From: Mobula hypostoma | Lineage: Eukaryota | Length of the DNA: 64,000 nucleotides | Reading direction: 5' to 3' | NCBI RefSeq assembly: GCF_963921235.1 | Contig: NC_086098.1 | Span: 237,956,001 to 238,020,000 of the forward strand | In this document: positions 4,456 through 58,797 of the stretch, piece after piece | Numbering within the stretch: position 1 is the stretch's first letter | Layout: every line of letters begins with the position of its first letter | Notes under the pieces: generated by a model | Seen by the model: only the letters and a program-made list of their open reading frames with translations | Databases searched by the model: none | What the model was told of the DNA's origin: nothing | Made by a program: the position numbers and the translations under genes

Positions 4456-4489
4456 TATTATTCTGAACAGGTCATAACTCCTCCAGAAG

Positions 4490-15560: not shown

Positions 15561-15611
15561 GTGTCTGCTCCTGTGATTTATCCATCCCTCCATAACTACG
15601 ATCCTAAAAAC

Positions 15612-24430: not shown

Positions 24431-24439
24431 TAGAGACAT

Positions 24440-38020: not shown

Positions 38021-39724
38021 CAATTTGAGCCCAAATGTCTTTAATTTGGTGTACTTAAGCAATCTCCACGCAGACATGTACAACCACGCATTCATCAGCG
38101 CAGAAGATACGCAATTGATCTCCTGGATGTACACGTGTCAGCTAATTATTATGTTATCGTGATAGTATTTGATTCCATTCTTTCCATCATGGAGCCTGTC
38201 GAGATTTGAACCCAGCACAACAACGCTTGGCTGCCTGCTTACCTTCGGCCTTGCCTAAGAAATCGGACTGTCCAGTCAACTAACTCTGAAGACTAGCAGT
38301 ATTCGTTTTATGTTTAGTTATTTATTTCAGCCTCCGTGCAGTCTTCGTTTTCGATTTGACAGTTTTAGTTGACGGCCCTGTTTGGCCTAGCGTTTATTGT
38401 TTTCTTTTCCCTCTAACTTTGTTCGCATTGAAGTCTGTGAAATTGAGAAAATTTTCTGCATGAGACCACTGCTGAACAGTCTGCCTTTGTTTTCAAGGTT
38501 TTCTGCCTCATTTTGAATTTTTCCATAACTCATCTCAACGGTCACCATCAACAGCAGCGAAAGTTTTCGCCTTCTTTCTAACCAGTGTTCAGAACCACTT
38601 TTCAGATCACCTTAATTTCCACATTAAAATCAGCGCTGAAACTTCAAACTCGTAGGGAAGATAAACCTATGCTATGAAACTTTCACATTGCTTGCTTTCG
38701 TGCGGCGAATACGCAGCCGAAAAGCTCACGACCAAAACAGGTGCAAAGACTGAAATTCCGCTGACACATGACATTAGGGCCAGAAGCATAAGTAACTCGA
38801 CTGAAGAAATCTGCGGGTTTAAGTTCTCTGGAAAAGGATGTGATGGGAGTCTTCACAATTTTTCTGCGGTATTATTGAGCCGAATTTACATATGCTTCTG
38901 GATAATGTGTGGAGTTGATTTATTTCTTTTAAGGAAATGAATTACTCCATCGGTGAAACTGAATTTTGGAAATACGTCAACATTATGCACAGAATGCTGA
39001 TGATGTTTCAGCATGTCAGAGTATTGTAAAGCTCCATTCCCAATAATACCCAGCAAATTCTGAAACCAAGTGGTTTGTGAAAATTTAAATGTACTGGTCA
39101 GGAGATGGGCACAGGCCTAGCCGGCGGTGGGGACGGGGCATAGAAGCGGGAAAAGCAGCTGCTGGAAATTCCACGGGTGACCATGTAGCGGTAGCAGAGA
39201 ATACTAAGGAAGTGTCTCAAACGAGACATGATAAGCTAACAAATAATGAGCTTTCACTTCCGTATCGCCTGTCACAATTTCGGACATTTCAACAAGAGTG
39301 AAAAATCAATAAACTTCTTGGTTTGTGTGCTGTCTTCCAATGAATGGGACAGAGAGTCAAATAAGAAGACTGGGTCATCGATTTTCCTCCTATTATTTGA
39401 GTGACCGCCGTCACCTCGATACACTGGGAAGGAATCAGTGTTGTTTGACCGTGGGATTACTTAAACCAATACGCTTTAGGCAGATAAGGTTTAAGATGTT
39501 TGTACGATCTAGCAGTGCAATACTGCCGCACTGCATGTACGAAAATGCACCTATTCCACCACTGCAATTTGCCAAACCCGTTATACTGTTACCTCCACTG
39601 ACCTGTCAATACCGCTGGCTTCAATACATTGCTAAATTGGTGATTCAACAAGAGTTTCATTGGGTCATAGAACACTTTAATAATGATCGCTAAATTTCAG
39701 GTTGTGTCCAAGGGATCAATGTCC

Positions 39725-40805
39725 ATTTAAGAATGAGATGTTCCTGAATCGCTGAGTGTATGCCTTCAGACTTCTGTATCTCCTATCCGATGGCAACAGT
39801 GAGCAAAGGGCATGCCTTGGGTGCTAGAGAACCTTAATAATGGACGCAGCCTTTCCGAAACACCGCTCCTTGAAGATGTCCTGGATACTTTGTAGGCCAG
39901 TACCCAAGATGGAGCCGACTAAATTTATAACCCTCTGCAACTTTCTTCAGTCCTGTGCAGTAGCACAACCACCCCTCCCCCACCATACTAAACAATGATG
40001 CAGCCTGTCAGAATGCTCTCGACAGTACATCCATCGAAATTTTTGACTGTATTTCTTGGCATACCCAATCTCTTTAAACTCCCAATGAAGCATAACCACT
40101 GACTTGCCTTCTTTAATAATAATAATAGCTACATTAATATGTTGGGACCAAGTTTGGTCCTTTGAGATCTTGACAACCAGGAAGTTGAAGCTGCTCACTC
40201 TCTCCATTTCTGATCCCTTTGTGAGGATTGGTATGTGTTCCTTTGTCTTACCCTTCCGGAAGTTGGCATATCTCACTCCTGTCCGCCCCCACCACCTGAA
40301 ATTCTGCCAACAATGTTTGTATCATCAGCAAATTTATAGATGTCAGTTCGGCTATGCATAGCCACGCTGTCATGGGCATATAGAGAGAAGAGCGGGGAGA
40401 TAAGTACACACTCCTGAGGTCAACCAGTGCTGATCGTCAGCGAAGAGATGATATTATCATCAATCCGCACAGATCATCGTCTTCCGGTTAGGAAGTCGAG
40501 GATCCAGTTGCAGAGGGAAGTACAGAGGCCTAGGTTCTGCAGTTTCTCGGTCAGGATTCTGGGAATAATGGTATGCAATGCTGAGCTGTAGTGTTTGCGG
40601 TGTCCAGCTGGTCTAAAACCATGTGAAGAGCTATTGAGATTGTATCTGCCGGTGACCTAATGTAGCGATCTGCAAATTGCAATGGGTCCAGGTCCTTGCT
40701 GAGGCAGGAGTTCAGGCTAGTCATGGCCAAGCTCTTCAAGTATTTCATTACTGTAGATGTAAGTGCTACCAGGAGACATTCATTAAGCCAGCTTGCATTA
40801 TTAGT
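39725..40805 (-). mobile_element. Rex1/Babar fragment (paralog of 3375-4455)
   Basis: [28 protein letters not shown]; MERVSSFNFLVVKISKD. Confidence 0.8.
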
Positions 40806-40819
40806 CTGAACAGGTCATA

Positions 40820-42650
40820 CCTCCGCCAGAAGAGATCGCAATGTTCCTGACGCCCTACCCCCTGCACTCATTAATTTGCCAAATCATCCTCTTTCTAACC
40901 TCACTGGCGCATGGCAAGGGCAGCAATCCAGAAATTAGGCCTCGTTTTCTAAATTCTCTTTTCAGGACCTCTCCGCTTTTCCTTCCTATGTCATTGGTAC
41001 CAATATGTACCAAGACGTCTGTCTGTTCTCCTTTCATCTCCAAAATTGTGTAGACGCGATCTGACACGTCGCTGACTCTGCCACCTGCGAGGCAACATGT
41101 CATGCGGGTGTCCCATACACGTCCACAGAATCTCCTGTCTGTTCCTCTGACCATTGAGTCCCCTGTCCCTCCCTATCCCCTCTTCTTCCTCAATCCCTTC
41201 TGGACCGTGCATGCATGCTCAGTGCCAATAACCCGGTCTCCGTGGTTCTCCTGTGAGGTCACCCCACAACGGTATCCAAAGCAGTATACTTATTATTAAG
41301 GGGACTGGCCACAAGGGTGCTCTGTGGTAACTGTCTATTTACATTTATCTTTCTCCTAACAGTCACCCCAGTCATGATCTTGCTATTGACTGGCACTTCT
41401 CAGAAACCGCATTGGGAAAGAAAAGTCTCTGGGCAGCATCCAGAGCAGGAAAGTTGCTATGGAAATGCAAGACCGTCTCATCGCATCGATTCCCACTTTT
41501 TCATAATGAATGCATAGAAATTGTCATCAAGCTCAAGCCACCTCGCATAGATAAGATTAAAATTGACTGTGAACTGTTAAACCGGCATCAAATAAGCAGA
41601 TTCATAGAATCACAGAACCCCACAACCCGGAAACAAATATTTCAGTTCAGCTGGTCAATGCTGGTCTGCATGGTAATACAGACTGAAAAGCTTGAGCACG
41701 TGGATATTAAGAAAAAGGATGTGCAGGAGCTTTTTGAAAGTATCAAGTTGGATAAGTCACCAGGACCGAACAAAATGCACCTCAAGCTAATGTAAGAGGC
41801 GAGGGAGCAGATTGTTGAGCTTCTGGCAGTGATTTTTGCATCATCAATGGGGACAGGAGAGGTTCCGAAGGATTGGAGGGTTGTGGATGTTATTCCATTA
41901 TTCAAGAAACGGAGTAGAGATAGCCCAGGAAATTATAGACCAGTAGGTCTTACTGAAGCGGTCGGTAAGTTGATGGAGAAGATCCTTAGATGCAGGATTT
42001 ATGAATATTTGGAGAGGCACAATATGGTTAAGAATAGTTTGCAGTTACATGAAGAGTAAACGGGAGCTGAGAGTTCATATTGGACCACTGGAAAATACTG
42101 CTGGTGACCTAGTAATGAGGGACAAAGAAATGGTAGATGATCGTAATGGGTACATTGCATTTGTCTGCACTGTGGATGACACTAGCAGTATGCCAGAGGT
42201 CCGTGAGTGTCAGGCAGCAGGAGTGAATGTTACGGCTATTACAAAGGAAAAAGTGCTAGACAACTGAAGGGTCTTAAGGTGGCTGAGCGAGGTTACCGAA
42301 GAGCTAACGGACTCATTAGTCGTGATTTATCAAGAATCACTTCATTCTGGCTTGGTCACGGAGGACGACAGAATTACACATTTACCTCACTCTTTAAGAA
42401 ATGAAATTGTATGCCTGTAAGCCTAACCTCAGTGTTTGGGCATTGTTGGACTCTATTACGAAGGATAAGGTTTCGGGATATTTGGAGACTAATGATAAAC
42501 TAAGTTAAAATCAGCATGGTTTCCACAAAAGGAAATCTAGCACTACTCTGTTAGTTCTTCGAGGAATTAACGAACAGTGTGGACAAAGGCGAGGCAGTGG
42601 ACGTCATTTACTTGAATTTTCAGAAAGCGTTTGATAAGATGCCACACAAC
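40820..42650. mobile_element. CR1 fragments: ORF1 esterase (minus, ~40820-41370) and ORF2 (plus, ~41690-42650); paralogs of 4490-6305
   Basis: MVRGTDRRFCGRVWDTRMTCCLAG..; DWRVVDVIPLFKKRSRDSPGNYRPVGLT. Confidence 0.78.
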
Positions 42651-44161
42651 GCTGTATGTTTCTTTCTATGAATGACAAATATTTCTGCAATATTTAATGT
42701 ATTCTCTTTATGTTAATTGATTTTTCTGTTTTCGTGTTTTATAATGCGATTGACAGTCCCTGTATTTTCAAAGATGTTTTAAAACGTTAACAATGTTAAT
42801 TGTTCCAGTAAACCAAATGAGGGCTTCATTTGCCCGATTGTTCATTGGATTTCTACCTTATGGACAGGATTTATTTTCTCTGTTGTAGCGCACGTTGCTC
42901 TGTATTGTCCATAAATATAGTGATTAATATGGTCATTAATAGTCGGTGGAGTCCAGGTACAGGTTGACACCACCCAACCAGCATAAAAAAAACCTCATTA
43001 ATGACGAAGGCAGATTTCTACACCAAATTCTTGAAGAAATCAGCAGGTCAGGCAACAGTAAATAACTTGTGTGAAATGTTACTGAATTCGTTGTGTGTAC
43101 AAGGAACTAAAACTCGCAGTCGTCTTATCAGTCACACCCCCCAGAAAGACCACGCTATTGGTCAAGCAAGGTATAACTTTAACATAATTAAACGAGTCTC
43201 CGAAGTCATCCTACACTTGTTTTGCGCTGCAGCAACTCTCTCCCATCTGCAATTACAGTCTCAGATCCAGCACAACAAGTTTCAGGAAGAGCTCAACCAT
43301 CAGGCCCCTGAGCCGAAGTGGATGACTTTAATCACGACATCTCTGAACTGATTCCGCGTTCTATAGACTCACTTTCAAACTCATGTCCTGAGTATTATTT
43401 ATATATTTGTCCATTATACCTTTATCCGTTTGTTTATCTGTTTATCATTGATTGAGTTTAATTGATTTATCTATACATGTATGCATTATTTATTTATCTA
43501 TCTCTCTTTCAATCTATCCATTTATTTATTTGTGGTTGTTTGTCATTGTGCTTCTCAATCTTTGTGTGTAGTTTTTCATTCCATCTATTCTACCTTTTTA
43601 TTCCACTGTGAATATCTGTAAGAACATGAAACTCAGAGTCGTATATGAAGACGTTTACAGACTTTGACAACAAATTTACCTTAAACTTTGAAGGTAACTA
43701 TGAGTTACAGAAGCTAGTGTGCGGGTGTGGTGGGTGGTGACGGTGGTGTCAGGGCGGGAAGTGAGGCCGATGGCCTTCATTCAGGAACTAATGGAATCGA
43801 TGGAGAGAATGGTCACGTCACGGGGAAACATCCCGACAGTGTAACACTCCCAATGATGGTAAGACGTTGGCCAAAAGACAGTGAGAATGTTGCTCTCCCT
43901 CCCACAGGGATGGTTGTATATGAAGAGCAGAAGTGCAGGACGACGAGGAATAGAAGGTTCCGGTGAATGCGGGGGTGAGTGCCGACGGACAAAGAATGCT
44001 CAGGACACAGAGAGGAGTAAGCGGATTAAGATGACCGAGACGATTGAACTGTAATTCTGATTGGGGCTCCTAGACGGCACGTTGTCCACGACCATTCATC
44101 CCAACATACTTCCAGCAGCCCAGTAAATACAAGACACGATAAATCTACCGCTGTTTCCTCT

Positions 44162-44167
44162 TTTATT
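44162..44167 (-). terminator. Candidate polyadenylation signal AATAAA for IgL cluster 2
   Basis: Paralogous to 8499-8504, ~290 nt after the C stop. Confidence 0.6.
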
Positions 44168-44456
44168 TAGAGATGTGTTACACAAATTCCAACACAGCAG
44201 GGGAGATCGCTCCTGAATCTACACAGAGCGGTAGTTCAGACACAGCACAGTGGGGACAATTCTACACAAAATTATCCCTCGCAAGAGATGGATTATTGTT
44301 ACCAACTGTTTTGAAATTATTAAACATTCTGATTGTTTGCATAAGCGAACATTACTATACAATTACATTGCAATGGGCTGCTGCACAGACACAATGATTG
44401 CTTCACTGCATTAAACAAGAACAAACAATCCGTGTGTGCTGCCAGACGGCACACTC

Positions 44457-44785
44457 TCACTGCGCACAGATGGACGAAGAGATGGTGTTGCGCAGCGGCG
44501 AGCTCAGCGAGCTGTGGCTCACGCTGCAGGAATAACTCGAGCCCTTGTTCCAGGCAGCGGTGGTTAGCCGCAGGTAACTGCTCAGCCTGTAGCTCTGATC
44601 GGTGTCCAGGGCCACGGCGCCTGTCGTCACCCCACTCTCCGTCTCGACTCCATCCACGCTCCAGCGCAGCGCTACCAAGCCCGGCTTAAAACCACTCACC
44701 AGACAGGACAGAGTGGCCGAACCCGTGTCGGTCTCCTCCAGAGATGGAGGTAGCAGAAGAACTGAGGGCTTCCGGGAATCGCTGC
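44457..44785 (-). CDS. Ig light-chain constant exon, cluster 2 (sigma-cart/type I-like)
   Basis: Acceptor CACATAG|GC; 329 nt; (S)SDSRKPSVLLLPPSLEETDTGSATLSCLVSGFKPG..YSCSVSHSSLSSPLRNTISSSICAQ*; about 95% nt identity to cluster 1 C. Confidence 0.96.
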
Positions 44786-46482
44786 CTATGTGAGAGAGGA
44801 GACGAAGGGGATAGAAACAATATTATTTCATGGACTGTTCAAAGATAGAAATACCAGCGCCAAATTAACGCAGTCATTGGGACACAGCAAACGGCACATT
44901 TGAAACCTCGGGTACAAAGCTTTGAATGAAGAGTTGCCCAGATTATTCGCAGCCTTGCGCGGCTACGACGTGACATCATCTATTTAAGAAAAATGTTTTT
45001 GAATCCACCCTGCTCTCGGTACTGCCTTGTGTTAAAAGATAACTTCAACACTACTCAGCCTCTTCGCTAATTCCCCACACCGTGCCCATATGATTGGTCT
45101 CTCTAGTGAGACCAGTTCCTTGTTGTTCTCCAATAACTCCCCAAATCTTGAACTCTTAGGACAATAACTGAGAATATTACACCTTCAGATAATGATAGAA
45201 AGAAGGCTCTTTGGGATGTCCCGAAGTCGGGGAAGCTCAGTAAATATCCAAGACTCGGTACCCAGTGGCTGAAGAAGAAATGATGGGAAAAAGAGCTGGT
45301 CTGTGAACCGGTGAGAAGCGGGAAAAGGCGAAACGCCTCGTTCAGATCCAGATTTAATTCCGAACCCGTAATAACCCGGCTATTGCCGCTCGACTCTGTG
45401 ACCAGTCTGTTGTCTGCCCAGCACCTTCCCCTAGTGTGTATTATTTTAAGTCTGACGTTTTTCTCCTGTGTTTTCTACAATCATAATGACGCTGTTCCTA
45501 ATCAGAAACTGCAAATTGCGTTAATCTGAAGCGGTCAACATCCTGTCCTTTGGTCCAGGATTTACCACACGCAGAAAAATTATGGAATATTCGCGAGAAA
45601 CATGTTCTCAGAGGTGGTGAATGAAGAGGGAAAGGTAGATGTCACGCTTGCGGTAGCGCGCCGAATTAGGTGTGAACATCATTCAAGACAGTATGTGAGA
45701 TAACGATAGGATAGACAGTCAAGATTTTTTTTCCCCAGGGCAAAAAGCTAAGCCGAGAGGAGAATAGTTTACAGGAGAAGTTTGGTGAATGTTTACTTTA
45801 TATACAGAGTGATGGGTGCATGAGCTGGAGGAGGCAGATACGATAGGGACGTTTAAGAAGCTGTTAGACGGAGACATGAGTGTGCTGAGAATGGAGGGAT
45901 ATGGAGTATCTGTAGACAGCAGGGATTGGTTTAATTTGACATCATAGAGGGGCCGTTATAATAAGACTATTGAATGGTTCTCTTGTACGGTAAAATGGAT
46001 TATTGACCGCACAATCTACCTCCTTATCATCTTGCAACTTATCTACCTGCACTGCATTTCCTCTGGGGCTATTAATTTTTATTCTGCATTAAGCTGTGTT
46101 TAACTCAATGCACCGTCATCACGTGATCTTTATGGACATTATGCAAGACAGATTTTTCATTGCATCTTGTGAAAAGTAGCAAAATTAAGCCAATACTAAT
46201 AATATAATGCACGGGGCCTATTGTGTTAAAGAGATGGCATATCGGAAAGTATTGAATTCTGCTACACCGACTGAAGTAGATCAAAAGTGTCAACAAAAAA
46301 TATGTTCACAAGTCAAGCGGCCATTAATTTGATTGTTGGGGCTGACTCGATAGGCTGAACGGCCTCTTGTGCCAGACTGAGACAGATGGAACCTGCCCTC
46401 CCTGGCCGGGATTTTATCCAGCTGTGGGGAATGAGAGTGGCTGCAGTGGGAATTGTTTGTAACAGAATGAGGGACCACTTAC

Positions 46483-46836
46483 TCTTAATATCCAGGATGG
46501 TGCCTGAACCGAAGATAACTCCATTATCCCACGCTGCACAGTAATAGACGGCGGAATCCCGGGGTTCCAAACTGCTGATGGTCAGAATGTAACTGTTGCT
46601 GGAGGTGTCTCTGGACGGTTGAAAACGGTCTGTGATCCCTGTACCTCGGTATATGCTATTGCCTGTGCTATGTGATAACACCCACTCCGGTCGCTCCCCG
46701 GGACGCTGTCGGTTCCAGCTAATGTAGTAACTTCCAACATTACCGTTCTGCATCCGACACTCTAAGCGGGCGGTTTGTCCCGCGGAAACAGGTCCGGACA
46801 TTGGGGTCTGATTGAGGACTGGGGCCGCGTGGATAT
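46483..46836 (-). CDS. Germline-joined VJ exon of Ig light chain, cluster 2
   Basis: Acceptor TTTTATCGCAG|AT; 354 nt; DIHA-APVLNQ..C..SYYISWNRQ..SHSTGNSIYRG..YYC-AAWDNGVI-FGSGTILDIK; donor AAGA|GTAAG. No RSS between V and J. Confidence 0.96.
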
Positions 46837-46943
46837 CTGCGATAAAACACGATAAAACCAGTGGGTGACTTGGAGCAAAATAAAAATCAGCAGTGATCCC
46901 AATTTTAACGGATAATCCGTGAGTAAACCAATCCGACTCTCAC

Positions 46944-46992
46944 CTGGTAAATGAACCAGCAGAACCCACAGGAGATGCAGCGCTGGGGACAT
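46944..46992 (-). CDS. Ig light-chain leader exon, cluster 2
   Basis: 49 nt, identical to leader 1; donor CCAG|GTGAG; 107-nt intron. Confidence 0.92.
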
Positions 46993-47110
46993 TCCTCCGG
47001 ACAGGTGCAGACAGCGAGCGCCCAAAAATTCCGACCGAACCATGCGCTGTTCTGCACACTTCGGGAACCCCTCCGCTTTCAGAGCCAACAAACTGGGGTC
47101 TTCGGGTCCG

Positions 47111-47133
47111 TTTATTAATTGGGATGTAAATGA
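47111..47133 (-). promoter_or_regulatory. Variant octamer/decamer (TCATTTACAT) plus TATA-like TAATAAA upstream of leader 2
   Basis: Same motif and spacing as cluster 1. Confidence 0.65.
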
Positions 47134-48229
47134 GTAGGCGGCGCCAAGGAAAGAATGTGGGCGGAGTTAGACAAGTTGACCTTCGGAAATTTTGAATGGC
47201 TACCTTGCTGATTTTTAAAACCTTAACCCCAAATTTCAAGGTTGTTTTATCTTCAGTTGTATTACATATTCAGGTCCGTAGAACCTTGGAGAATATTCAG
47301 GCTAAATTTATTTTAGACATTGTTTCGGCTGCTTCCCTCTGGAACAGTAGGTGTGAGTGGTGTTGGCACTCGGCCACTCGTCTCTGCCCAGAATGGCTAA
47401 TGATAAAAAAACTTTTCAAGATCACATCAAATTTCTACAAGGTCTCTTTGCCATCCCAAAAATACCTCGACAATGCATTGGTTCCTATCTGCATATCCTA
47501 TTCCTGCAGAAATCATGTCAGTACTATGCGTATCAGAGACTAAAGTTTGTCGCTAAAATGTGTAACTCTCAACCGACCAGTGCTTTTCTCTGTGGTCTCT
47601 AAAGCGGGTCTGTGCAGAATTTCATTCAACGTCAGACCGTCGGGTCAGTCATTCTGCAAAGGGGTTGCTGTGGAACGCAATCAACGCAGCAGGGCATCAG
47701 CAGTGCTCCTCTTGGCAGTGAATCTTCCGGGTAACATTAGATGGGAATTAGGGATGTTTAGCAATAATTGCACCAGTGATGCAAACGGATGTAGATGCTG
47801 CAATCTGGAGCAACTCGGAAAGAACTGGACGGACTGAACGAGTTAGGCAGCATCTATGCAGGGAAATAGACGGTCGGCGTTTAAGTCTGAGAACGCTCAT
47901 TTGAAACCTCATTCATGTAATTTTCCGACAGTGAGATATTCAGGCATGGAACAAGACTACGAAAACATTCATACAAGGCGGTTAGGAGCAAAATATACTC
48001 TGACTACATTAGTTCCAGCAAGGGGCTCTGTCAACAGGAAAGGATCTGACCACCAGCCCGTGACGTTCCATGACCTTACTTCGCCATCAACATCCGGGGA
48101 GGACCACTAATCAGAAAACACTGGATTCATTAAGTTGAGGCTTATAAATTAGTCGGTGGTCACAGGCTTTGAATTATAAAATTCAAAGTTCAAAGTTAAT
48201 ATACTGTCAAATTCCGATAAGTCATTCTT

Positions 48230-51012
48230 TTACATAGCAAAGTACAGCACAGTACAGGCCCTTCGGTCCACAATGTTGTGCCGACCCTCAAGCCCTGCCT
48301 CCCACATAAGGCCCAACCTTAAATTCCTTCATATTCCTGTCTAGTAGCTTCTTAAACTTCACTAGTGTATCTGCCTCCACCACTAACTCAGGCAGTGCAT
48401 TCCAAGCACCAACCACTCTCTGAGTAAAAAACCTTTCTCTAATATCCCCCTTGAACTTCCCACCCCTTACCTTAAAGCCATGTCCTCTTCTATTGAGCGG
48501 TGGTGTCCTGGGGAAGAGGGGCTGGTTATCCACTCTATCTATTCCTTTTATTATCTTGTACACCTCTATCATGTCTCCTCTCATCCTCCTTCTCTCCAAA
48601 GAGTAAAGCCCTAGCTCCCTTAATATCTTATCATAATGCGTACTCTCTAAACCGTGCAGCATCCTGATAAATCTCCTCTGTACCCTTTCCAATGCTTCCA
48701 CATCCTTTCTATAGTGAGCCGACTAGAACTGGACACAGTACTCCAAATGTGGCCTAACCAGAGTTTTATAGAGCTGCATCATTACATCGCGACTTTTAAA
48801 CTCTATCCCTCGACTTATGAAAGTTAACATCCCATAAGCTTTCTTAACTGCCCTATCCACCTGTGAAGCAACTGTCGGGGATATGTGGACATGTACCCCC
48901 AGATCCCTCTGCTCCTCCACACTACCAAGTTTCCTGCCATTTAGTTTGTACTCTGCCTTGGAGTTTGTTCTTCCAAAGTGTACCACCTCACACTTCTCTG
49001 GGTTGAACTCCATCTGCCACTTCTCAGCCCACTTCGGCATCCTATCATTGGCTCTCTGAAATCTTTGACAATCCTCTACACTATCTACAACACCACCAAC
49101 CTTTGTGTCGTCTGCAAACTTGCCAACACACCCTGCTACCCCTGCATCCTGGTCGTGAATAAAAATCACGAAAAGTAGAGGTCCCAGAACAGATCCTTGT
49201 GGGACACCACTAGTCATAATCCTCCAATCTGAATGTACTCCCTCCACCACCACACTCTGCCTTCTGCAGGCAAGACAATTCTGAATCCACCTGGCCAAAC
49301 CTCCCTGGATCCCATGCATTCTGACTTTCTGAATAAGCCTACCGTGTGGAACCTTGTCAAATGCCTTACTAAAATCCATATAGATCACATCCACTACACT
49401 ACCCTCATCTATATGCCTGGTCACCTCCTCAAAGAACTCTATTAGGCTTGTTAGACACGATCTGACCTTCACAAAGCCATGCTGACTGTCGCTGATCAGA
49501 CGATGATTCTCTAAATGCCCATAGATTCTATCTCTAAGAATCTTTTCCAACAGCTTTCCCACCATAGACGTAAGGCTCACTGGTCTATAATTACCCGGAC
49601 TATCCCTACTACCTTTTTTGAACTAGGGGATAACATTCCCCTCCCTCCAATCCTCCGGTACCATTCCCGTGGACAACGAGGACATAAAGATCCTAGCCAG
49701 AGGCTCAGCAATCTCTTCTCTCTACTCGTGGAGCAGCCTGTGGAATATTCTGTCAGGCCCCAGGGACTTATCCGTCCTAATGTGTTTTAACAACTCCAAC
49801 ACCTCCTCTCCCTGAATATCAACATGCTCCAGAACATCAACCTCACTCATATTGTCCTCACCATCATCAAGTTCCCTCTCATTGGTGAATACCGAAGAGA
49901 AGTATTCATTGAGGACCTAGCTCACTTCCACAGCCTCCAGGCACATATTCCCACCTTCATCTCTAATCGGTCTTACATTCAATCCTGTCATCCTTTTTTA
50001 CTTCACATAATTGAAGAATGCCTTGGGATTTTCCTTTACCCTACTCGCCAAGGCCTTCTCATGTCCCCTTCTTGCTCTTCTCAGCCCCTTCTTAAGCTCC
50101 TTTCTTGCTTCCCTGTATTCCTCAATAGACCCATCTGATCCCTGCTTCCTAAACCTCATGTATGCTGCCTTCTTCCACCTGTCTAGATTTTCCACCTCAC
50201 TTGGCACCCATGGTTCTTTCACCTTACCATTCTTTATCTTCCTCAGCGGGACAAATTTATCCCTAACATTCCGCAAGAGATCCCTAAACATCGACCACAT
50301 GTCCATAGTACATTTCCCTGCAAAAACATCATCCCAATTCATACCCGCAAGTTCTAGCCTTGTACCCTCATAATTTGCCCTTCCCCAATTAAAAATTTTC
50401 CCGTCCTCTCTGATTCTATCCTTTTCAGTGATAATGCTAATGGCCAGGGAGCGGTGGTCACTGTCCCCCAGATGCTTACCCAGTGAGAGATGTGTCTCCT
50501 GACCCGGTTCATTACCTAGTACTAGATCGAGTATGGCATGACCCCTAGTCGGCCTGTCCACATACTGTGACAGGAATCCGTCCTGGATAGACTTAACAAA
50601 TTATGCCCCATCTGAACCCTTGGAACTAATCAGGTGCCAATCAATATTAGGGAAGTTAAAATCACCCATGATAACAACCCTGCTATTTTTGCACCTTTCC
50701 AAAATCTGCCTCCCAATCTGCTCCTCTGTATCTCTGCTGCTACCAGGGAGCCTATAGAGTAACTGCTCCCTTCCTGTTCCTGACTTCTACCCATACTGAC
50801 TCAAAAGAGGATCTTGCTACATTACCCACCCTTTCTGTAGTTGTAATAGTATCCCTGACCAGTAATGCCACCCCTCCTCCCCTTTTCCCCCGCTCTCTAT
50901 CCCTTATAAAACACTGAAATCCAGGAATATTAAGAATCCATTCCTGCCCTGGTGTCAGCCAAGTCTCTGTAATGGCCACTACATCATAATTCCATGTATG
51001 TATCCAAGCTCT
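48230..51012 (-). mobile_element. CR1 LINE ORF2 (APE to 3' end, ~2.8 kb); present only in unit B
   Basis: Long frames 50752-51018 (YDVVAITETWL), 49998-50561, 48723-49580 (285 aa; FSKAFDKVPHG, FADDTK) and 48288-48701. No counterpart near 12470. Confidence 0.9.
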
Positions 51013-51819
51013 CAACACAGAGATTCATTTCATTGCGGGCAATCACAGCAAATACAAGAAGAAAGGGAGAAAAAAAAAGTTCAAAATCAATTTACTATAA
51101 AAGTGCGGTAAGTCATCATACACAACCCTGGCTTTCATTGACTTGCGCGCATTGAAAGTACTTTGTACATACAATGGAAGCTATGAAAAGCTAAATACTA
51201 AGACGAACAAACAGCCAATGTGACGAATATACAAACAAACAAATAAATACATACATAAATAAATAGATGGATAAATAAACATTATTTTGCCTCACATAAA
51301 CATTCACTTCACACTTTATCTCACCTGGTTGATCTTCAGGCCATGTCACTCAGACACCTGTACTAATATCTATTTTCTGACTGCCTGTGTCGGATCGTTA
51401 CTGTATCTAATGTGTCTGGCTTTATCTACTGTGTTTTTCACCTTGAACTCAGAGGAAAGGTGGTTCGTTTGTGTACATGTGTATGGTTAATTGGCAATAA
51501 TCTGCAACATGAACTTGCACACATGACTTGAAAGAGACTCCAATTTAGAACATTTTTCTACACATGACCTCACGTTTTCCACATTTTATTCGGAATTTCG
51601 TTTTCCTTCCCATTTTTGATCTGTGAACATCAACTCAGTGATTCTGCACTGTCCTGATAACCCTGGTAAACAACAAACATGGCAATATTACACTTAGTTC
51701 CCTTGTCCAATTGTTTGGATGTACACTGTGAACAGCTGCATTTCTTTTCAAAGCGAACTCTTGAGAATCACTTTACAGGCGGCCTGCTGATAATCAACAT
51801 GCACCATGTCCGTTGATAG

Positions 51820-53990
51820 CGAATCGATCCATTCCGTAAGTTATGACACTATTACCAAGAGATCACCAAGAGATTTGCCGATAACGTTTTCTAACCCTCT
51901 TTCCCGGGTGATCTGCAGGCACTTCCTTAATGTGAGGAGAGCGAGGATATAATTGATCAAAGTTACAGGGAAGTAGTCACCCCGAAGTTGCAAGAGGCGA
52001 ACAGCTGCGTGACTGTCAGGAGAAATGGAAATGGCAGAGCAGAGTACCCCTGTGGCCATAACCCTCCAGAACAAGTATACCGCTTTGGGTACTTCTATGG
52101 AGGAAGACCACCCGAGAGAATGCCACGGCGACCAAGTTGCAGGCACTTCGCATGGGTCCGTGGTGCAGAAGGGAAAGAGAGGGAAGAAAGGAGCGGTAGT
52201 GATAGGGAACTCAATAGAGAGCGGAACAGGGGTAGCAGCAATAACGTGTGTTTCTGGGGGAAATGAGGAAGGTGCAGGACATTTATATTCCAAAAATGAA
52301 GAAATACTCAAATGATAAAATAGTGGAACCATGCCTGATATGGAAAATCAAAGCTCTTGTAAAAACATAGGAAGGGCATACAACAGTTCAAAAATTGTGG
52401 GAAGATAAAGGATTTTGAAGTTTTAAAAACTCTACAGAGAGCAACATAAAAAAAATTATTTGGAAGGGAACAGATGAAATATGAAAGCAAGCTAGCAAAT
52501 AAGCTAGCAGTGTGCGTGATGTTGCAGTGTGTGAAGGAAGAGAGAAGGTGCTAAATGCACATAAGTCACCCGAACCAAAGGAATTGCACCCGAGTGTCCT
52601 GAAAGTGGTAGCGTTAGAGACTGTGGTGACATGAAATATGACCTTTCAAAAATAATTGGACTCCGGCATGGTACCAGATGACTGTGAAATTTCAAATCTT
52701 ATTCCACTCTTTAAGAAAGGAAGAAGGCAACAGAAAGTAAATTATAGACTAATTAGCCTGACGTCAGTGTTTGGGAAGATGACAGAGTCAATTGTTAAGG
52801 ATGAGGTAATGGACTGCTTGGTGACACAGGACAACATAGGACGAAATCAGTATCCTTTCCTTCAGGGAAAATCCTGCCTGACGAACCTGTTGGAATTCTT
52901 TGAGATTGCCAGTAGGATAAAGGGGATGCAGTAGATGTTGTGTATTTAGACTTTCAGAAGGCCTTTGACAAGGTGCCACTCATGAGGCTGCTTACCAAGT
53001 TAAGAGCCCATGGTATTACAGGAAAGTTACTAACATGGTTAAAACATTGGCTGATTTGTAGGAGGCAGCGAGTAAGAATAAAATAATCCTTTTCTGGATG
53101 GCTGCCAGTGACTAGTGGTATTCCGCAGGGGTAGGTGTTGGGACCACCTCGTTTTATGCTGTATATAAATGATTTAGTTGATGGAATAAATGGCTTTGTT
53201 GCCAAGTTTGAAGATGGTACGAAGGTTCGTGGAGAGGCAGGTAGTGTTGAACAAAGGACTTAGTCAGGTTAGGAGAATGGGCAAGAAAGTGGAAAAAGAA
53301 ATATAATGTTGAAAAATGCATAGTAATGCTCTTTGGGTAGTAGAAATAAACGTGCGGCCTATTTTCCAAACGGGAAAAAAAAATCAAAGAATCTGAGATG
53401 CAGAGGGACTTGGAAGTCCTTGCGCAGAACATTCTGAAGATTACTTTCAGCTTGAGTCGGTGATGAGGAAGGCAAATGCTACGTTGGCATTTATTTCAGT
53501 CGGTGTAGAATACAAGAGCACGGGCCCTTCATCTCAGAAAGGATGTGCTGTCATTGGAGACGATCCACAGGAGGTTCACAATGATGATTCCAGGAATGAA
53601 AGGGTTATCATTCGTGGAAGGCTTAATGGCTCTGGGTCTGTACTCGCTGGAATTCAGAAGGATGAGGGGGGATCTCATTGAAACCTTTCGAATGTTGACA
53701 GGCCTAGAGAAAGTGGAAAGGACGTGTCCCATGGTGGGAGAATCTAGGACAAATGGGCACAGCCTCAGAATAGAGGGGCGCCCTTTCAAAACAGAGATGC
53801 GGAAAAATTTCTTTCGACAAAGGGTGCTGGATTTGTGGAATTTGTTTCCATATGCAGCTGTTGCGGCCGGGTCGTTGGGTGTATTTCAGGCAGAGATTGA
53901 CAGGTTTTTTTATTGGGGTTGAGGAGGAGATTTTCAAAAAGGATCAGCGATGATTGAATGCCGGAGCAAACTCGTCTGGCCAGATGGCCT
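51820..53990 (+). mobile_element. Decayed CR1 (paralog of 13230-15560)
   Basis: KKGAVVIGNSIESG; NYRLISLTSVFGKMTESIVKDEV; RRFTMMIPGMKGL..RKNFFRQRVLDLWN. Confidence 0.82.
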
Positions 53991-55913
53991 AATTCTGCTC
54001 CTGTGTCTTACGGTCTTTTTAGCCATCCCTCCATGACTAAGATCCTAAAAACATGTTCTCTTGCCTTCTCCTCTCCGCTCTCTCGCTCTCTCTCTCACTC
54101 TCTCTCTCTCTTTATCTCTCTAACTATATATATTTTGGTATTGGATATCGGTGGCTTTTTCTTGACCAAAAACACCTTCTTAGACATACCGCCTGCAAAG
54201 AGTGATAGAGTGTCACGTTGGCCTTTCGTTTACCGACGCTTTATTTATTTACTGTCGAGCGTTCCTATTCTGAATGTGAAATTGATCCAAGTTAACATTC
54301 CATCTTAACCTTTTTCCTACATACTTATTTTGGTAGTCCTGGTGGATCTTCATGTCTCCAACAACGCCACTCCAGCGGGATATAGCAAGGGTAAAATATT
54401 AGCAGACTATTTTCCAATGATATAGGGTGAGACTACAACTAGAGGTCTGGCATAAGGGAGAAAGCTGAAATGTTTAAAGCGAACTTCGGGAGAAGCTTCT
54501 TCACTCAAAGGATGGTGAGAGTGTAGAAAGAGTTACCAGCAGTTGTGATGGATGAGGGTCGATTTTAACATTTAACAGAAATTTGGATGGAGGGCGGGGT
54601 ATGCATGCCAATGGTCCGGGTGCAGAATGACGGGGACTAACCATATTAATAGTTCGGAACGGACTAGATGGACCGAAAGGCGTGATTCGGTGTTGTGGTG
54701 CTCCATTACGTTATGACATTCCATGTTTATTTTAATCACGACCTCAGCACTTTGGGGCACAAACAACAAATGTCACGACATATGGCAGTGATATTATACC
54801 TGATTCTGTTGCTGATCATCACTCAACGAAGGATGTTATTAACAGTGAGTGACGTGTGGGACATCAAATCTCCGTTCTCTTGTCCATGATTTAGTTCATC
54901 ACCACCCAGCCTTCATTCTGCCACCACCTTAGGATACTGAGCAATAGATGAGAAGAAATGTCATCGAATTAAAAGTTCGAACTATGTGAGACGATAACAA
55001 CGGTTATCAATTAACGCCACTGTGAAACATCGGCCTTTGTTATTTGTGAAATTTATCCTGCAGTTTGGGTTGTGTAAGTCTTGTTCTATTGATTACCTCT
55101 TGTTAGATAATTGAAGATGGTGATTAAAGTATGACCACGTGTCGTTCATAACCTGGGATATGGTAATTCTCCCTCAACCCCGTCCTGACCGTAGGACACT
55201 GATCAGTCCAGTTAACTTCTCCCTCATTCAGTCAGGGGCTTTCAATTTTCTCACCCAGGGCCCCATGATTTTTTTTAGTCGCTGATCAGAGTCGAGCATG
55301 GGACGGATAGATGGATAGGGTCGGACTGTCTGTGTTGTGAGCGGCACTGATGCAGCTGCGGACCGCGTCATCTCCCCACGGGACCGGGACGGGGTTTGCA
55401 CAGCCTTTATTTAGCGACAGTTGCACAAATTGATGCTGTTTCTGTCCTGTTTGTGAACTGGTGCAGGTGGCGCGGTCACGAGGTCCAGGGAAGGTGGAGG
55501 CGTTGATGAGATACGACAGAACTTTTTAAAATTCTCTCAATCTGAGAAACTGCAATAATAAGAAGAGACACATTTTGTTACTAATTCTTGAAAATAAAAG
55601 CTTACACAATTGTAATTAGTTCTGACCAGCGATGAATGGGGCGCCAGAGGGACAAGGAAACAGAGAGGTAGAATGAGTTATGGGAAACCGGAGAGACAGA
55701 GGGTGAGTCGGTGAGAGGGGGATGTGAGAGGGGGATGGGGTGAAAGGAAAAGCACTGGCAAGTGAGGCAGACTGAGTAAGATAAGAATGTGAGCGGAGAG
55801 ACTGTGTGTGAGAGATAAGAAGAGACAGTTAGGAGAGAGACGGAGGGAGGGGAGATAGAGACAAGAAGCAGAGAAAGGAGAGAGAGAGAAGAGAAAGCGT
55901 GAGGAGCGAGGGG

Positions 55914-55916
<3 letters not shown>

Positions 55917-55948
<32 letters not shown>
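55917..55948 (+). repeat. (GT)16 microsatellite at the end of a GA-rich tract
   Basis: Direct reading; much shorter at the paralogous site ~17058. Confidence 0.95.
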
Positions 55949-55949
<1 letters not shown>

Positions 55950-57289
55950 AGAAAGAGAGAGAGAAATAGGAGGGTGCAGGAGATGATGATTCAGCCCTGT
56001 GTCTGATAAATGTATAGCTTTGAGAGTGGGGAACAGAAAACTCATGACAGGAACATAAGGGTTTGAGAATAGCCCGGAGGGTGATCATGGGCTCGGTATC
56101 TCTCTCCATCTCTGAATCAACCCGCAGCATAATATAACCATATAACCATTACAGCGCGGAAACAGACCATCTCGGCCCTTATAGTCCGTGCCGCACTCTG
56201 CTTCTCACCTAGTCCCACTGACCTGCACTCAGCGCATAACCTTCCATTCCTTTCCTGTCCATATAGCTGTCCAATTTAAATTTAAATGACAACATCGAAT
56301 CTGCCTCAACCACTTCTGCTGGAAGCTCGTTCCACACAGCTACTACTCTCTGAGTAAAGAAGTTCCCCTTCATGTTACCCCTAAACCTTTGCCTTTTAAC
56401 TCTGAACTCGGGTCCTCTTGCTTGAATCTCCCCCACTCTCAATGGAAAAAGCCAATCAACGTTAACTCTATCTATACCCCACATAATTTTAAATACTCTA
56501 TCAAGTCCCCCACAACCTTCTACGTTCCAAAGAATAAAGACCCAACTTGTTCAACCTTTCTCTGTAACTTAGGTGATGAAACCCAGGTAACATTCTAGCA
56601 AATCTTCTCTGTACTCTCTCTAATTTGTTGACATCTTTCCTATAATTCGGTACCAAAACTGTGCACAATACTCCAAAATTGGCCTCACCAATGCCTTGTA
56701 AAATTTCTACATTACATCCCAACTCCTATACTCAATGCTCTGATTTATAAAGGCCAGCATAACAAAAGATTTCGTCATCACCCTGCCCACATGGGATTCC
56801 ACCTTCAGGGAACTATGCACCATTATTCCTAGATCCCTCTGTTCTACTGCATTCTTCAATGCCCTACCATTTACCATGTATATCCTATTTTGATTAGTCC
56901 TACCAAAATGTAGCACCTCACATTTATCAGCATTAAACTCCATTTGCCATGTTTCAGCCCACTCTTCTAACTGGCCTAAATCTCTCTGCAAGCTTTGAAA
57001 ACCTACTACATTATCCACAACTCTAACTATCTTCGTATCATCTGCATACTTACTCATCAAATTTACTCCCCCATCATCCAGATTATTCATGTATATGACA
57101 AATAACATTGGACCCAGCACAGATCCCTGAAGCACACCGGCCTCCAATATGACAAATAGTTATCAACAACCACTCTCTGGCGTCTCCACACAGCCACTGC
57201 TGAATCCATCTTACTACTGCAATATTAATACCTAAATATTGAATCTTCCTAACCAACCTTCCATGTGGGACCTTGTAAAAGGCCTAGCT

Positions 57290-58797
57290 TGTCATGGACC
57301 GGTCCGTGAGGTCCGCATTCCGGTTCACGTTCCGGTCTGTGGAATCAGGACTCCGGGTCTTCCAGCTGTCCCTTGTTTTAGTTGAGTTAATCATAGGTAC
57401 CTGATTCCCATCTTGGGCTTGGAATATAAGTAGCCTTGGGGATGACTGTGGGCTGCTGGTTGGTCTTGTCAAGATTCCCTGGGAGCAACCTGCCGGGGGA
57501 AGGCTACAGCGGCCACTTGCCATCTTTAGGCCTCGTTAGAGAACCATCGCTTCATGGAACCTTGCTGTCGGTAGTCGGAGCCGTCTTTGCGGTATGGATT
57601 CGGCCGTTTGCCGGGCCAGCTGAGTGGCCGTCAGCCACTCCGAGCTAGGTAGGGAAAGCGGCTGTTTCCATAGACAGCCTAGGTTGCTGGCCGTAACTGT
57701 GACTCGGAGCAACCGCGATGCAGAGATGGGACTGACTGTCGTTCTTTGGTGTTTTTCTCTTCTTATCCTCGCCTCCGTGCAGTAAGTCAGGCCGTTTCGC
57801 CGTTGCCTTGCGGGGGGATCTGTCTTGTCTTGTCCTCGCCTCCGTGGGGTAAGTCAGTGCGCTCTGCGGTTGCCTTGCGGGGGAACCTGTTTGTCTTGTC
57901 TTTGCGTCTATTGGGTAAGTCCGGCCATTCTGCCGTTACCCGACGCAGGGACATGTCCCACGTTGGTGTGGAGATGAAGTTGAATCCCGGCCTGTCTAAG
58001 GATAAGTCCCAGCTCTATGTCTATGTTCTGTCCGGTCTCATGCTGGTGTCATATTAAAAATGAATTCCGGCTTTTCGAAGGATAAGTCCTGGCTCTTATG
58101 TTTATGTACAGTTCCCAGTCTGTCTCCGAATTCCAGCCTCCGAGTTATCAGCCTCCGCATCTGAAGACCTAAAACCCCAGCCTATCTCCCAGCTCAAGCC
58201 TCAAGACCCCAGCCTGCCTCCCAGCTCAAGCCTCAAGACCCCAGCCTGTCTCCCAGCTCAAGCCTCAAGACCCCAGCCTGTCTCTCAGCTCAAGCCTCAA
58301 GACCCCAGCCTGTCTCCCAGTTCAAGCCTCAACACTCCAGCCTCTCTCCCAGCTCAAGCCTCAAGAACCCAGCCTGTCTCCCTGCTCAAGCCTCAAGACC
58401 CCAGACTGTCTCCCAGCTCAAGCCTCAAGACCCCAGCCTGTCTCCCAGTTCAAGCCTCAAGATCTCAGCCTGCCCCCCATTTCAAAGCTCTAGACCCCAG
58501 CCACGTCCTGTCCTGTAGTCATGTCATGCCCTTGCCTGGTTCTGGGGCCCAACCCGAGGCAAGACGCAGGGTATGGGTCCTTGTCCAGTCTCTGGCTCGG
58601 AGCCCAAGCCCAGGCTCCTAGTGCATAGTTCCTTGTCCGGGGTCCCTGTCTTCTCCATGTGCTAGTCCAAGACTACTTTCTTGTCCCTGCTCCTTGCCTG
58701 TGTCCTGTCACGTCAACACTCTAGTCAAGTCCTGTTCCGTGTACTTCAGTGTCTGTGTCTTGCATTTGGGTCCGCATCAAGGCCTTCCTTTGTGACA
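57290..58797 (+). mobile_element. Solo LTR (paralog of 18368-19744)
   Basis: TGTCATGG...TGTGACA termini; right flank TTACT. Confidence 0.78.
58174..58500 (+). repeat. 32-bp minisatellite, ~10 copies
   Basis: ACCCCAGCCTGTCTCCCAGCTCAAGCCTCAAG at a 32-nt period from 58174. Confidence 0.92.

What the first reader, a model, noticed from the sequence alone, without database searches (positions are those of the whole stretch)
46483..46836. Germline repertoire building: replacements concentrated in CDR2/CDR3, silent changes in frameworks
Hand comparison of the two VJ exons gives 34 nt differences and 17 aa changes. FR1 has 4 synonymous and 0 replacement changes. FR3 (from RGTG) has 7 synonymous and 1 replacement (H/Y). 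The CDR2 stretch THYKDNSMN vs SHSTGNSIY has 6 aa changes from 8 nt. CDR3 WNNEAA vs WDNGVI has 4 aa changes from 5 nt with no purely silent codon. The leader is 49/49 identical and C is ~95% identical. Inference: purifying selection on the fold and diversifying selection on the binding site of genes that cannot gain junctional diversity, so the repertoire is being hard-coded by duplication and selection.
Basis: partly seen in the sequence, partly recalled or inferred. Interest (0 to 1): 0.7.

Follow-up and report, generated by a model that had tools for sequence, protein, structure and literature searches.

The report
Devil-ray pre-joined antibody light-chain genes
Two neighbouring copies of a devil-ray antibody light-chain gene, inherited already assembled, differ mostly in their antigen-binding loops while the scaffold is conserved; the pattern is real, but it was already published for skates in 1995.

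Summary
The window is from Mobula hypostoma and holds two light-chain clusters (leader, fused VJ exon, C exon) on the minus strand. They sit in a tandem segmental duplication about 36 kb apart. The VJ exons differ at 34 of 354 nt and 17 aa, the leaders are 49/49 identical, and the C exons are 94.8% identical.

The genes belong to the type I (sigma-2, sigma-cart) class. Copy A is 76% identical to a Leucoraja erinacea type I chain and is exactly XP_062888284.1.

- **Frameworks:** clearly under purifying selection (dN/dS 0.16, P = 2e-4).
- **CDRs by dN/dS:** 0.96-1.16 for all CDRs and 1.5-1.8 for CDR2+3, not significant. Two copies cannot prove positive selection.
- **CDRs against the neutral rate:** 20.7 kb of co-duplicated non-coding DNA gives 9.3% divergence. 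CDRs changed more than that predicts (15 observed vs 9.0 expected, P = 0.04; CDR2+3 13 vs 5.3, P = 0.003, chosen post hoc). This is suggestive only.
- **Family:** 24 Mobula paralogues are most variable in the three CDRs and in FR2, the framework before CDR2.
- **Expression:** spliced RNA contigs match copy A exactly. Copy B was not detected in RNA.

Anderson et al. 1995 reported the same pattern and conclusion for at least 89 germline-joined type I clusters in skate. This is a new member of a known kind. The scan also noted copy B on this window (s1-144258).

The parts
46944..46992 (-). Copy A leader exon (49 nt; MSPALHLLWVLLVHLP plus the first base of the next codon)
   Evidence: Read directly and translated. 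RNA contigs join 46944 to 46836. Identical in copy B.
46837..46943 (-). Copy A leader-VJ intron (107 nt, GT..AG)
   Evidence: The joint 'skips 107' appears in RNA-like runs X5 and X6, which have zero depth in the intron. 9/107 differences from copy B.
46483..46836 (-). Copy A germline-joined VJ exon (V-set domain running straight into the FGSGTILDIK J motif and a splice donor)
   Evidence: Pfam V-set E = 1.9e-16. Identical to XP_062888284.1 (P0077).
46718..46756 (-). Copy A CDR1 (RMQNGNVGSYYIS)
   Evidence: Bounded by the conserved Cys and Trp. Translated. 1 silent and 1 replacement change against copy B.
46640..46672 (-). Copy A CDR2 (HSTGNSIYRGT)
   Evidence: 6 replacement and 2 silent nt changes. 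8 differences against 3.0 expected if neutral. Depth of paralogue contigs dips here.
46514..46537 (-). Copy A CDR3 (AAWDNGVI), identical to the family consensus
   Evidence: 5 replacement and 0 silent nt changes against copy B.
44457..44785 (-). Copy A C exon (C1-set domain, with stop codon)
   Evidence: Pfam C1-set E = 1.3e-22.
11187..11235 (-). Copy B leader exon
   Evidence: 0/49 differences from copy A.
10726..11079 (-). Copy B germline-joined VJ exon (CDR2 HYKDNSMNRGT, CDR3 AAWNNEAA)
   Evidence: Pfam V-set E = 3.4e-19. Forms the first part of the fused public model XP_062925920.1 (P0080).
8795..9123 (-). Copy B C exon (with stop codon)
   Evidence: Pfam C1-set E = 4.6e-23.
38947..64000 (.). 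Duplication unit that holds copy A; collinear with 2615-25003
   Evidence: Self-BLAST. Non-coding p-distance 0.0926 over 20,994 aligned nt.
2615..25003 (.). Duplication unit that holds copy B

Best explanation
These are two adjacent members of the devil-ray (Mobula hypostoma) family of type I (sigma-2, sigma-cart) immunoglobulin light-chain clusters. Each cluster is a compact leader, VJ and C gene of about 2.6 kb whose V and J segments are already fused in the germline. The two arose by tandem duplication of a unit of about 36 kb.

Shown here:
- The fold-determining frameworks, the leader and the C domain have been held by purifying selection since the duplication.
- The antigen-contact loops, above all CDR2 and CDR3, changed at or above the neutral rate.

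Inferred:
- Because no junction is made somatically, the primary light-chain repertoire of this class is the set of germline copies. Gene duplication followed by CDR divergence, most likely favoured by selection for distinct binding sites, builds it.
- Somatic hypermutation can diversify it further. That rests on the literature and was not tested here.

Copy A is transcribed and correctly spliced. Copy B is intact but was not detected in the available RNA.
For: Identity:
- V-set and C1-set domains.
- 76% identity over 226 aa to Leucoraja erinacea 'type I immunoglobulin light chain'.
- Copy A is exactly XP_062888284.1 of M. hypostoma.
- V runs into J with no spacer and a donor follows directly. 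No RSS consensus in the window.

Duplication: collinear blocks of about 22-25 kb, 9.3% non-coding divergence.

Selection:
- FR dN/dS 0.16, P = 2e-4. C exon pN 0.029 against 0.093 neutral, P = 9e-5. Leader 0/49.
- Replacement:silent ratio, CDR vs FR, P = 0.017.
- Differences against the context-specific neutral expectation: all CDRs 15 vs 9.0 (P = 0.04), CDR2 8 vs 3.0 (P = 0.013), CDR2+3 13 vs 5.3 (P = 0.003), third codon positions 14 vs 11.4 (not significant). Only 0.7% of non-coding 57-nt windows reach 13 differences.

Family:
- 24 Mobula paralogues have mean column entropy 0.72, 1.18 and 1.11 in CDR1, CDR2 and CDR3, against 0.25-0.33 in FR1, FR3, FR4 and C.
- Paralogue pairs differ at 28-50% of CDR residues but at 5-16% of FR residues.

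Expression: RNA-like contigs cover exons only, carry the leader-VJ splice joint and match copy A with 0 differences.

Precedent: the same pattern and conclusion for at least 89 skate type I clusters.
Against: - dN/dS in the CDRs does not differ significantly from 1 (0.96-1.16; CDR2+3 1.5-1.8, P of 0.38 or more), so neutral drift of unconstrained loops is not excluded.
- The excess over the non-coding rate is modest for the a priori test (P = 0.04). It is strong only for CDR2+3, which were picked after seeing the data.
- Nei-Gojobori synonymous divergence in the exon (0.17-0.19) is itself above the non-coding rate, although third positions are not.
- About 48% of informative site pairs among subfamily proteins are phylogenetically incompatible. 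That is compatible with gene conversion as a source of clustered differences.
- Copy B's exact exon is absent from the RNA contigs.
- FR2 is as variable as CDR1 across the family, and 7 of 17 aa changes lie in frameworks.
Confidence: 0.62

Rival explanations
1. Relaxed constraint only. After the duplication the CDR loops simply drifted neutrally while the frameworks stayed constrained. No selection for diversity is needed.
For: CDR dN/dS is 0.96 (1.16 with kappa = 2.1) and cannot be told apart from 1. CDR1 shows no excess (2 observed vs 3.7 expected) and CDR3 alone gives P = 0.08. Some likely orthologue pairs between M. hypostoma and M. birostris keep their CDRs almost unchanged (0/32 and 1/34 differences), so continual diversification is not universal.
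Against: CDR2+3 hold 13 differences against 5.3 expected from co-duplicated non-coding DNA (P = 0.003; 0.7% of non-coding windows). All five CDR3 changes are replacements and all fall on copy B's lineage, because copy A equals the family consensus. Skate data report replacements exceeding neutral substitutions.
Confidence: 0.22
2. Patchy gene conversion or unequal exchange among the many tandem paralogues imported short diverged tracts into CDR2, FR2 and CDR3. That would make the A/B differences clustered and above the local neutral divergence without new point mutations.
For: There are mosaic similarities. Copy A's CDR2 (STGNSIY) resembles M. birostris P0079 (TTGNSIY), whose FR2 (QPPGERPKWVL) matches copy B instead. 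48% of informative site pairs are incompatible. A and B are no closer to each other in V (85%) than to several other paralogues. Synonymous divergence in the VJ exon is nominally raised.
Against: The PHI-type test on the protein alignment is not significant (P = 0.16). Third-position divergence fits the neutral expectation. Copy B's CDR3 has no close donor among the 24 proteins. Homoplasy at selected sites produces the same incompatibility.
Confidence: 0.12
3. Mutation bias. The germline differences are the footprint of AID-type or CpG-driven hypermutability of the CDR sequence, not of selection.
For: 9 of 34 differences fall on WRC/GYW hotspot bases, which make up 51 of the 354 positions (P = 0.07).
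Against: Among G/C sites alone there is no enrichment (P = 0.49). Only 5 of 34 differences lie at CpG sites, which make up 47 of the 354 positions. Adjacent double substitutions are not in excess (5 observed vs 4.2 expected, P = 0.40). Silent sites in the CDRs are not raised (3 of 18.7).
Confidence: 0.03
4. Artefact. The two copies are mis-assembled haplotypes, or the CDR letters are consensus errors.
For: None found.
Against: 9.3% divergence with indels over 21 kb, plus a retroelement insertion present in only one unit, is far beyond allelic variation. Independent DNA and RNA contigs reproduce copy A exactly, and DNA contigs carry a letter specific to copy B's CDR2.
Confidence: 0.01

Closest known systems
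Germline-joined type I light-chain clusters of the little skate, Raja (Leucoraja) erinacea (Anderson et al. 1995, J Exp Med 182:109; PMC2192082)
   Same: Same light-chain class (76% identity). Same leader, VJ and C cluster with V and J fused in the germline, and a multi-copy family. The paper reports the same pattern: amino-acid differences preferentially in CDRs, replacements exceeding neutral substitutions, and joined genes expressed.
   Different: A different batoid order (Myliobatiformes, not Rajiformes). The family seen here is smaller: 12 M. hypostoma members recovered (11 separate public models plus copy B inside a fused one), and up to about 18 paralogue contigs per DNA run carrying one variant, against at least 89 clusters in skate. 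The chromosome-scale context shows a tandem unit of about 36 kb, and the co-duplicated non-coding DNA gives an internal neutral rate that the 1995 work did not have.
Nurse-shark sigma-2 (NS5, type I) loci and horn-shark type I genes
   Same: Same isotype. One nurse-shark locus is germline-joined in frame (review PMC5192425).
   Different: In horn shark the type I genes are split and rearrange. In nurse shark only one of four loci is joined. In Mobula every model recovered reads as fused VJ, though I verified this on DNA only for the two copies in the window.
Germline joining by RAG activity in germ cells (Lee et al. 2000, J Exp Med 191:1637; PMC2193156)
   Same: It gives the accepted origin of fused VJ genes and the idea that a joined gene is a receptor freed from somatic rearrangement.
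   Different: That work concerns recently joined kappa-type (NS4) genes. Here the shared CDR3 length and the WDNGVIFG-type junction across paralogues and species point to an old joining event followed by duplications. This is an inference.
Positive selection on CDRs of germline V genes (Tanaka & Nei 1989, Mol Biol Evol 6:447; cited)
   Same: Same logic: replacement exceeds silent substitution in CDRs but not in frameworks among germline paralogues.
   Different: Mammalian V segments still gain CDR3 by rearrangement. Here CDR3 is also germline-encoded and takes part in the divergence.

Membership tests
Type I (sigma-2, sigma-cart) Ig light chain of cartilaginous fish, germline-joined cluster form | One V-set domain followed by one C1-set domain, preceded by a split leader | tested here: met
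   Pfam V-set (E = 1.9e-16 and 3.4e-19) and C1-set (E = 1.3e-22 and 4.6e-23) for both copies. A 49-nt leader exon and a phase-1 intron.
Type I (sigma-2, sigma-cart) Ig light chain of cartilaginous fish, germline-joined cluster form | Sequence groups with named type I chains rather than with other isotypes | tested here: met
   76% identity over 226 aa to Leucoraja erinacea 'type I immunoglobulin light chain'. The hit lists also hold the Heterodontus francisci light-chain entries. No explicit tree against kappa, lambda and sigma was built.
Type I (sigma-2, sigma-cart) Ig light chain of cartilaginous fish, germline-joined cluster form | Compact cluster: leader, V(J) and C within a few kb, repeated many times in the genome | tested here: met
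   Leader start to stop codon spans about 2.5 kb in both copies. Two clusters about 36 kb apart. 12 M. hypostoma members, 11 as separate public models, all on one 252-Mb chromosome.
Type I (sigma-2, sigma-cart) Ig light chain of cartilaginous fish, germline-joined cluster form | V and J contiguous in germline DNA, with no RSS or spacer | tested here: met
   An open frame runs from FR1 through YYC, CDR3 and FGxGT to the splice donor. No heptamer-spacer-nonamer consensus in the window (exact match only). Genomic DNA contigs span the V part of the exon up to the start of CDR3, or run from the J end into FR3.
Type I (sigma-2, sigma-cart) Ig light chain of cartilaginous fish, germline-joined cluster form | Transcribed and spliced as a light chain | tested here: inconclusive
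   Copy A: met. Exon-only coverage, the leader-VJ joint and contigs with 0 differences in two RNA-like runs. Copy B: RNA runs hold only 6-15% of its exon words. The run type is the tool's guess, supported by zero intron depth.
Type I (sigma-2, sigma-cart) Ig light chain of cartilaginous fish, germline-joined cluster form | Pairs with an Ig heavy chain through a C-terminal cysteine | not testable with these tools
   A Cys is present three residues from the C terminus in both copies. Pairing was not tested.
Germline V genes with positively selected CDRs (Tanaka-Nei and Anderson pattern) | Replacements concentrated in CDRs relative to frameworks | tested here: met
   Replacement:silent ratio in CDR vs FR, Fisher P = 0.017. 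Replacement density P = 0.001. Family entropy is 2-4 times higher in the CDRs.
Germline V genes with positively selected CDRs (Tanaka-Nei and Anderson pattern) | dN significantly greater than dS in CDRs | tested here: inconclusive
   omega is 0.96-1.16 for all CDRs and 1.5-1.8 for CDR2+3. One-sided P is 0.38-0.66, and only 2-3 silent changes are available.
Germline V genes with positively selected CDRs (Tanaka-Nei and Anderson pattern) | CDR substitution rate above an independent neutral rate | tested here: met
   15 observed vs 9.0 expected (P = 0.04) for all CDRs. 13 vs 5.3 (P = 0.003) for CDR2+3, using 20.7 kb of co-duplicated non-coding DNA. Empirical window test 0.7%. The margin is modest and the stronger figure is post hoc.
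Germline V genes with positively selected CDRs (Tanaka-Nei and Anderson pattern) | Site-model omega above 1 across the paralogue family | not testable with these tools
   DNA of the other Mobula clusters could not be fetched because the sample file is too large. Read laying listed only 40 of 244 variant positions.

The most novel reading that the evidence does not exclude
In a tandem array of germline-joined sigma-2 clusters, the binding-loop codons may evolve faster than the non-coding DNA duplicated with them. The figures here are 2.4-fold for CDR2+3, and five replacement changes with no silent ones in copy B's 8-codon CDR3 on a single lineage. If this held across the whole array, it would mean a sustained, directly measurable adaptive or conversion-driven 'germline hypermutation' of hard-coded antibody specificities. 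Different copies could then be partitioned by expression, as copy A is transcribed and copy B is silent in the sampled tissues.
Probability: 0.12. Interest if true: 0.55.

Novelty: new member of a known kind. Interest (0 to 1): 0.25.

Why it matters
It extends to devil rays (Myliobatiformes) the classical skate result that a whole light-chain class is inherited pre-assembled and diversified in the germline. The held paper library has no paper on Mobula light-chain genes.

It also shows that chromosome-scale assemblies supply an internal neutral yardstick, the co-duplicated intergenic DNA, for testing selection on each cluster.

It does not change the current picture of antibody evolution. Its main practical value is for annotation: the public record calls these genes 'lambda-1 light chain-like' and fuses copy B into a 1151-residue chimeric model.

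Tried and rejected
- **Fetching DNA of the other Mobula paralogues** for a site-model dN/dS. The look-up of encoding contigs returned no DNA for the M. hypostoma assembly. It did return a thorny-skate locus (L001), but that holds only one VJ exon, so I did not pursue a cross-species codon analysis.
- **Read laying at 80% likeness** to harvest paralogue variants. Only the 40 best-supported of 244 variant positions were printed, and CDR2 paralogues were too divergent to align. The 30 exon variants listed (FR 13 silent, 4 replacement; CDR 5 silent, 8 replacement) are a biased sample and I did not use them as a test.
- **First protein search with the 117-aa VJ exon** missed the family because of the length filter. 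I re-ran it with full-length hits.
- **Raised synonymous rate in the VJ exon** (Nei-Gojobori pS 0.186 against 0.093). I considered it as evidence for local hypermutation. It largely dissolves when third positions are compared with a context-specific neutral expectation (14 vs 11.4) and when kappa is taken into account.
- **WRC/GYW hotspots, CpG sites and tandem doublets** are not enriched.
- **PHI-type recombination test on proteins** is not significant.
- **Immunoglobulin octamer** (ATTTGCAT) is absent near either promoter.
- **RSS consensus** is absent (exact match only).
- **Haplotype or mis-assembly explanation** is rejected.

Full report
**What is there**

The stretch 46483-46836 is a 354-nt exon on the minus strand. 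It follows an AG acceptor and is followed by a GT donor. It encodes an immunoglobulin V domain that runs without interruption through YYC, an 8-residue CDR3 and the J motif FGSGTILDIK.

- A 49-nt leader exon lies 107 nt upstream at 46944-46992 and encodes MSPALHLLWVLLVHLP.
- A C1-set constant exon lies 1.7 kb downstream at 44457-44785.
- Pfam confirms V-set and C1-set domains.
- A second cluster with the same architecture lies at 11187-11235, 10726-11079 and 8795-9123.
- tblastn finds no further V or C exons in the window.

**Context**

A self-comparison shows that 2615-25003 and 38947-64000 are collinear copies. The window therefore holds about 1.75 units of a tandem repeat of roughly 36-39 kb, with one cluster per unit. 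The rest of each unit is retroelement debris: RVT_1 ORFs at 17840-18595 and 48723-49580, and a weak GIY-YIG match at 1054-2166. Outside the exons the two units differ at 9.26% of 20,994 aligned positions.

**Species and family**

Copy A's product is identical to XP_062888284.1 of Mobula hypostoma, except that the public model starts at an in-frame ATG 51 nt further upstream. Copy B is the first part of a 1151-residue fused model, XP_062925920.1.

The closest named relatives are the 'type I immunoglobulin light chain' of Leucoraja erinacea (76% identity over 226 aa) and the horn-shark light-chain entries in the hit lists. [quoted passage not shown]

I recovered 12 M. hypostoma members (11 separate public models plus copy B inside the fused one) and 12 M. 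birostris models. All read as fused VJ and all lie on one chromosome in each species.

**Check of the observation**

I set the CDR limits from the conserved Cys, Trp, YYC and FGxG landmarks. They agree with alignments to solved antibody V domains.

**Read support**

Logan contigs of two DNA runs and two RNA-like runs of the same species were laid on 46400-47000.

- The RNA-like runs have zero depth in both introns. They carry the joint 46836 to 46944, which skips 107 nt.
- They include contigs with 0 differences across CDR1 and CDR2 of copy A, and one contig with a single difference across CDR3. Copy A is therefore real, transcribed and correctly spliced.
- DNA contigs carry a letter specific to copy B's CDR2, the G-to-D codon.
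- The RNA runs hold about half of the words of copy A's 801-nt stretch, which is half exonic. They hold only 6-15% of the words of copy B's VJ exon. Copy B is not detectably expressed in those samples. Contigs can drop rare transcripts, so this is not proof of silence.

**Selection tests on the pair**

Nei-Gojobori counts:

| Region | Silent changes / sites | Replacement changes / sites | dN/dS |
|---|---|---|---|
| Frameworks | 12 / 62 | 7 / 196 | 0.16 (P = 2e-4) |
| All CDRs | 3 / 18.7 | 12 / 77.3 | 0.96 |
| CDR2+3 | 2 / 11.7 | 11 / 45.3 | 1.5 (P = 0.44) |

Weighting sites by the non-coding transition/transversion ratio (kappa 2.1) raises the CDR values to 1.16 and 1.79, still not significant. 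The classical test therefore shows purifying selection on the scaffold but cannot separate positive selection from relaxed constraint in the loops.

A second test uses the co-duplicated non-coding DNA as the neutral yardstick, with separate rates for CpG, other G/C and A/T sites:

| Region | Expected differences | Observed | P |
|---|---|---|---|
| Whole exon | 34.2 | 34 | not tested |
| Third codon positions | 11.4 | 14 | not significant |
| FR1 | 8.0 | 3 | 0.04 (deficit) |
| CDR2 | 3.0 | 8 | 0.013 |
| CDR3 | 2.3 | 5 | 0.08 |
| CDR2+3 | 5.3 | 13 | 0.003 |
| All three CDRs | 9.0 | 15 | 0.04 |

Only 0.7% of non-coding 57-nt windows reach 13 differences. The a priori test on all CDRs is marginal. 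The stronger figure rests on a choice made after seeing the data.

Copy A's CDR3 equals the consensus of the 24 proteins, and contigs of the other paralogues mostly carry copy A's letters there. All five CDR3 changes, every one a replacement, are therefore inferred to lie on copy B's lineage.

**Mutational alternatives**

The differences are not enriched at WRC/GYW hotspots once base composition is allowed for. They are not enriched at CpG sites or in adjacent doublets either.

**Family level**

Among the 24 Mobula proteins, mean column entropy is 0.72, 1.18 and 1.11 in CDR1, CDR2 and CDR3. It is 0.25-0.33 in FR1, FR3, FR4 and the C domain. FR2 is also variable at 0.92.

Paralogue pairs within M. 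hypostoma differ at 28-50% of CDR residues and at 5-16% of FR residues. At 80% likeness the pile-up of paralogue contigs drops about four-fold at CDR2.

Two likely orthologue pairs between the Mobula species keep their CDRs nearly unchanged (0/32 and 1/34 differences), while others differ more.

About half of all informative site pairs are mutually incompatible, and some paralogues look mosaic. For example, P0079 has copy A's CDR2 type with copy B's FR2 type. A positional test for recombination is not significant, however. Gene conversion is neither shown nor excluded.

**Comparison with what is known**

Anderson et al. 1995 (PMC2192082) described at least 89 germline-joined type I clusters in skate.

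Lee et al. 2000 (PMC2193156) give the accepted origin of such genes, namely RAG-mediated joining in germ cells. The held library has no paper on Mobula light-chain genes.

**Verdict**

The feature is real and the description is accurate. I class it as a new member of a known kind, of low to moderate interest.

The decisive analysis, site models and recombination tests on all paralogue exons with their flanks, could not be run because the paralogue DNA was not retrievable. The assembly gap at 15612-15759 was left untouched.

Noticed in passing
window 1-64000 (blocks 2615-25003 and 38947-64000): The whole window is about 1.75 units of a tandem repeat of roughly 36-39 kb, with one light-chain cluster per unit. 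The non-coding parts of the units are 9.3% diverged.
   Followed up: yes
window 48225-51076: A block of about 2.85 kb is present only in copy A's unit, about 1.2 kb upstream of its leader. It holds a reverse-transcriptase ORF (48723-49580, RVT_1 E = 1.4e-28), so it is a retroelement insertion after the duplication, or a deletion in the other unit.
   Followed up: partly
window 10726-11079 (copy B): Copy B is intact and has good splice sites. Its exact VJ exon is held at only 6-15% of words in the RNA-like runs that hold copy A's exons in full, so the two neighbours may be expressed differently.
   Followed up: partly
window 8795-11235 and beyond the window start: The public model XP_062925920.1 (1151 aa) fuses copy B, the next light-chain cluster downstream (identical to XP_062888272.1) and an unrelated V-C1-C1 transmembrane receptor. 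It looks like an annotation chimera. The family is also labelled 'lambda-1 light chain-like' although it is type I/sigma-2.
   Followed up: partly
window 47041-47043: An in-frame ATG lies 51 nt upstream of the leader ATG, and the public models use it (adding MVRSEFLGARCLHLSGG). The 108 nt upstream of the leader are more conserved between the copies (6/108 differences) than the next 300 nt (39/300).
   Followed up: no
window 46712-46714 (copy A, FR2): Copy A has Asn (WNRQ) where most family members have the Tyr of the WYRQ motif. It also has lineage-specific Tyr for His in FR3 and Ser for Pro in the FGxG motif. Even so, it is the copy seen in RNA.
   Followed up: partly
L001:10185-23227 (Amblyraja radiata): One germline-joined type I VJ exon is followed by three near-identical C exons spaced about 5 kb apart.
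   Followed up: no
window 46484-46834: Against solved structures, the best-scoring aligned stretches of this light-chain V domain are heavy-chain V domains. FR2 and FR3 look VH-like (RQxPGxxxEWV and RFxxSRDxSxN).
   Followed up: no
window 15612-15759: A run of 148 N (assembly gap or masked stretch) lies inside copy B's unit. I left it as it is.
   Followed up: no
window 1054-2166: A 370-aa ORF on the minus strand has a weak GIY-YIG match (E = 2.4e-4, below Pfam's cut-off). It may be a Penelope-like element remnant.
   Followed up: no
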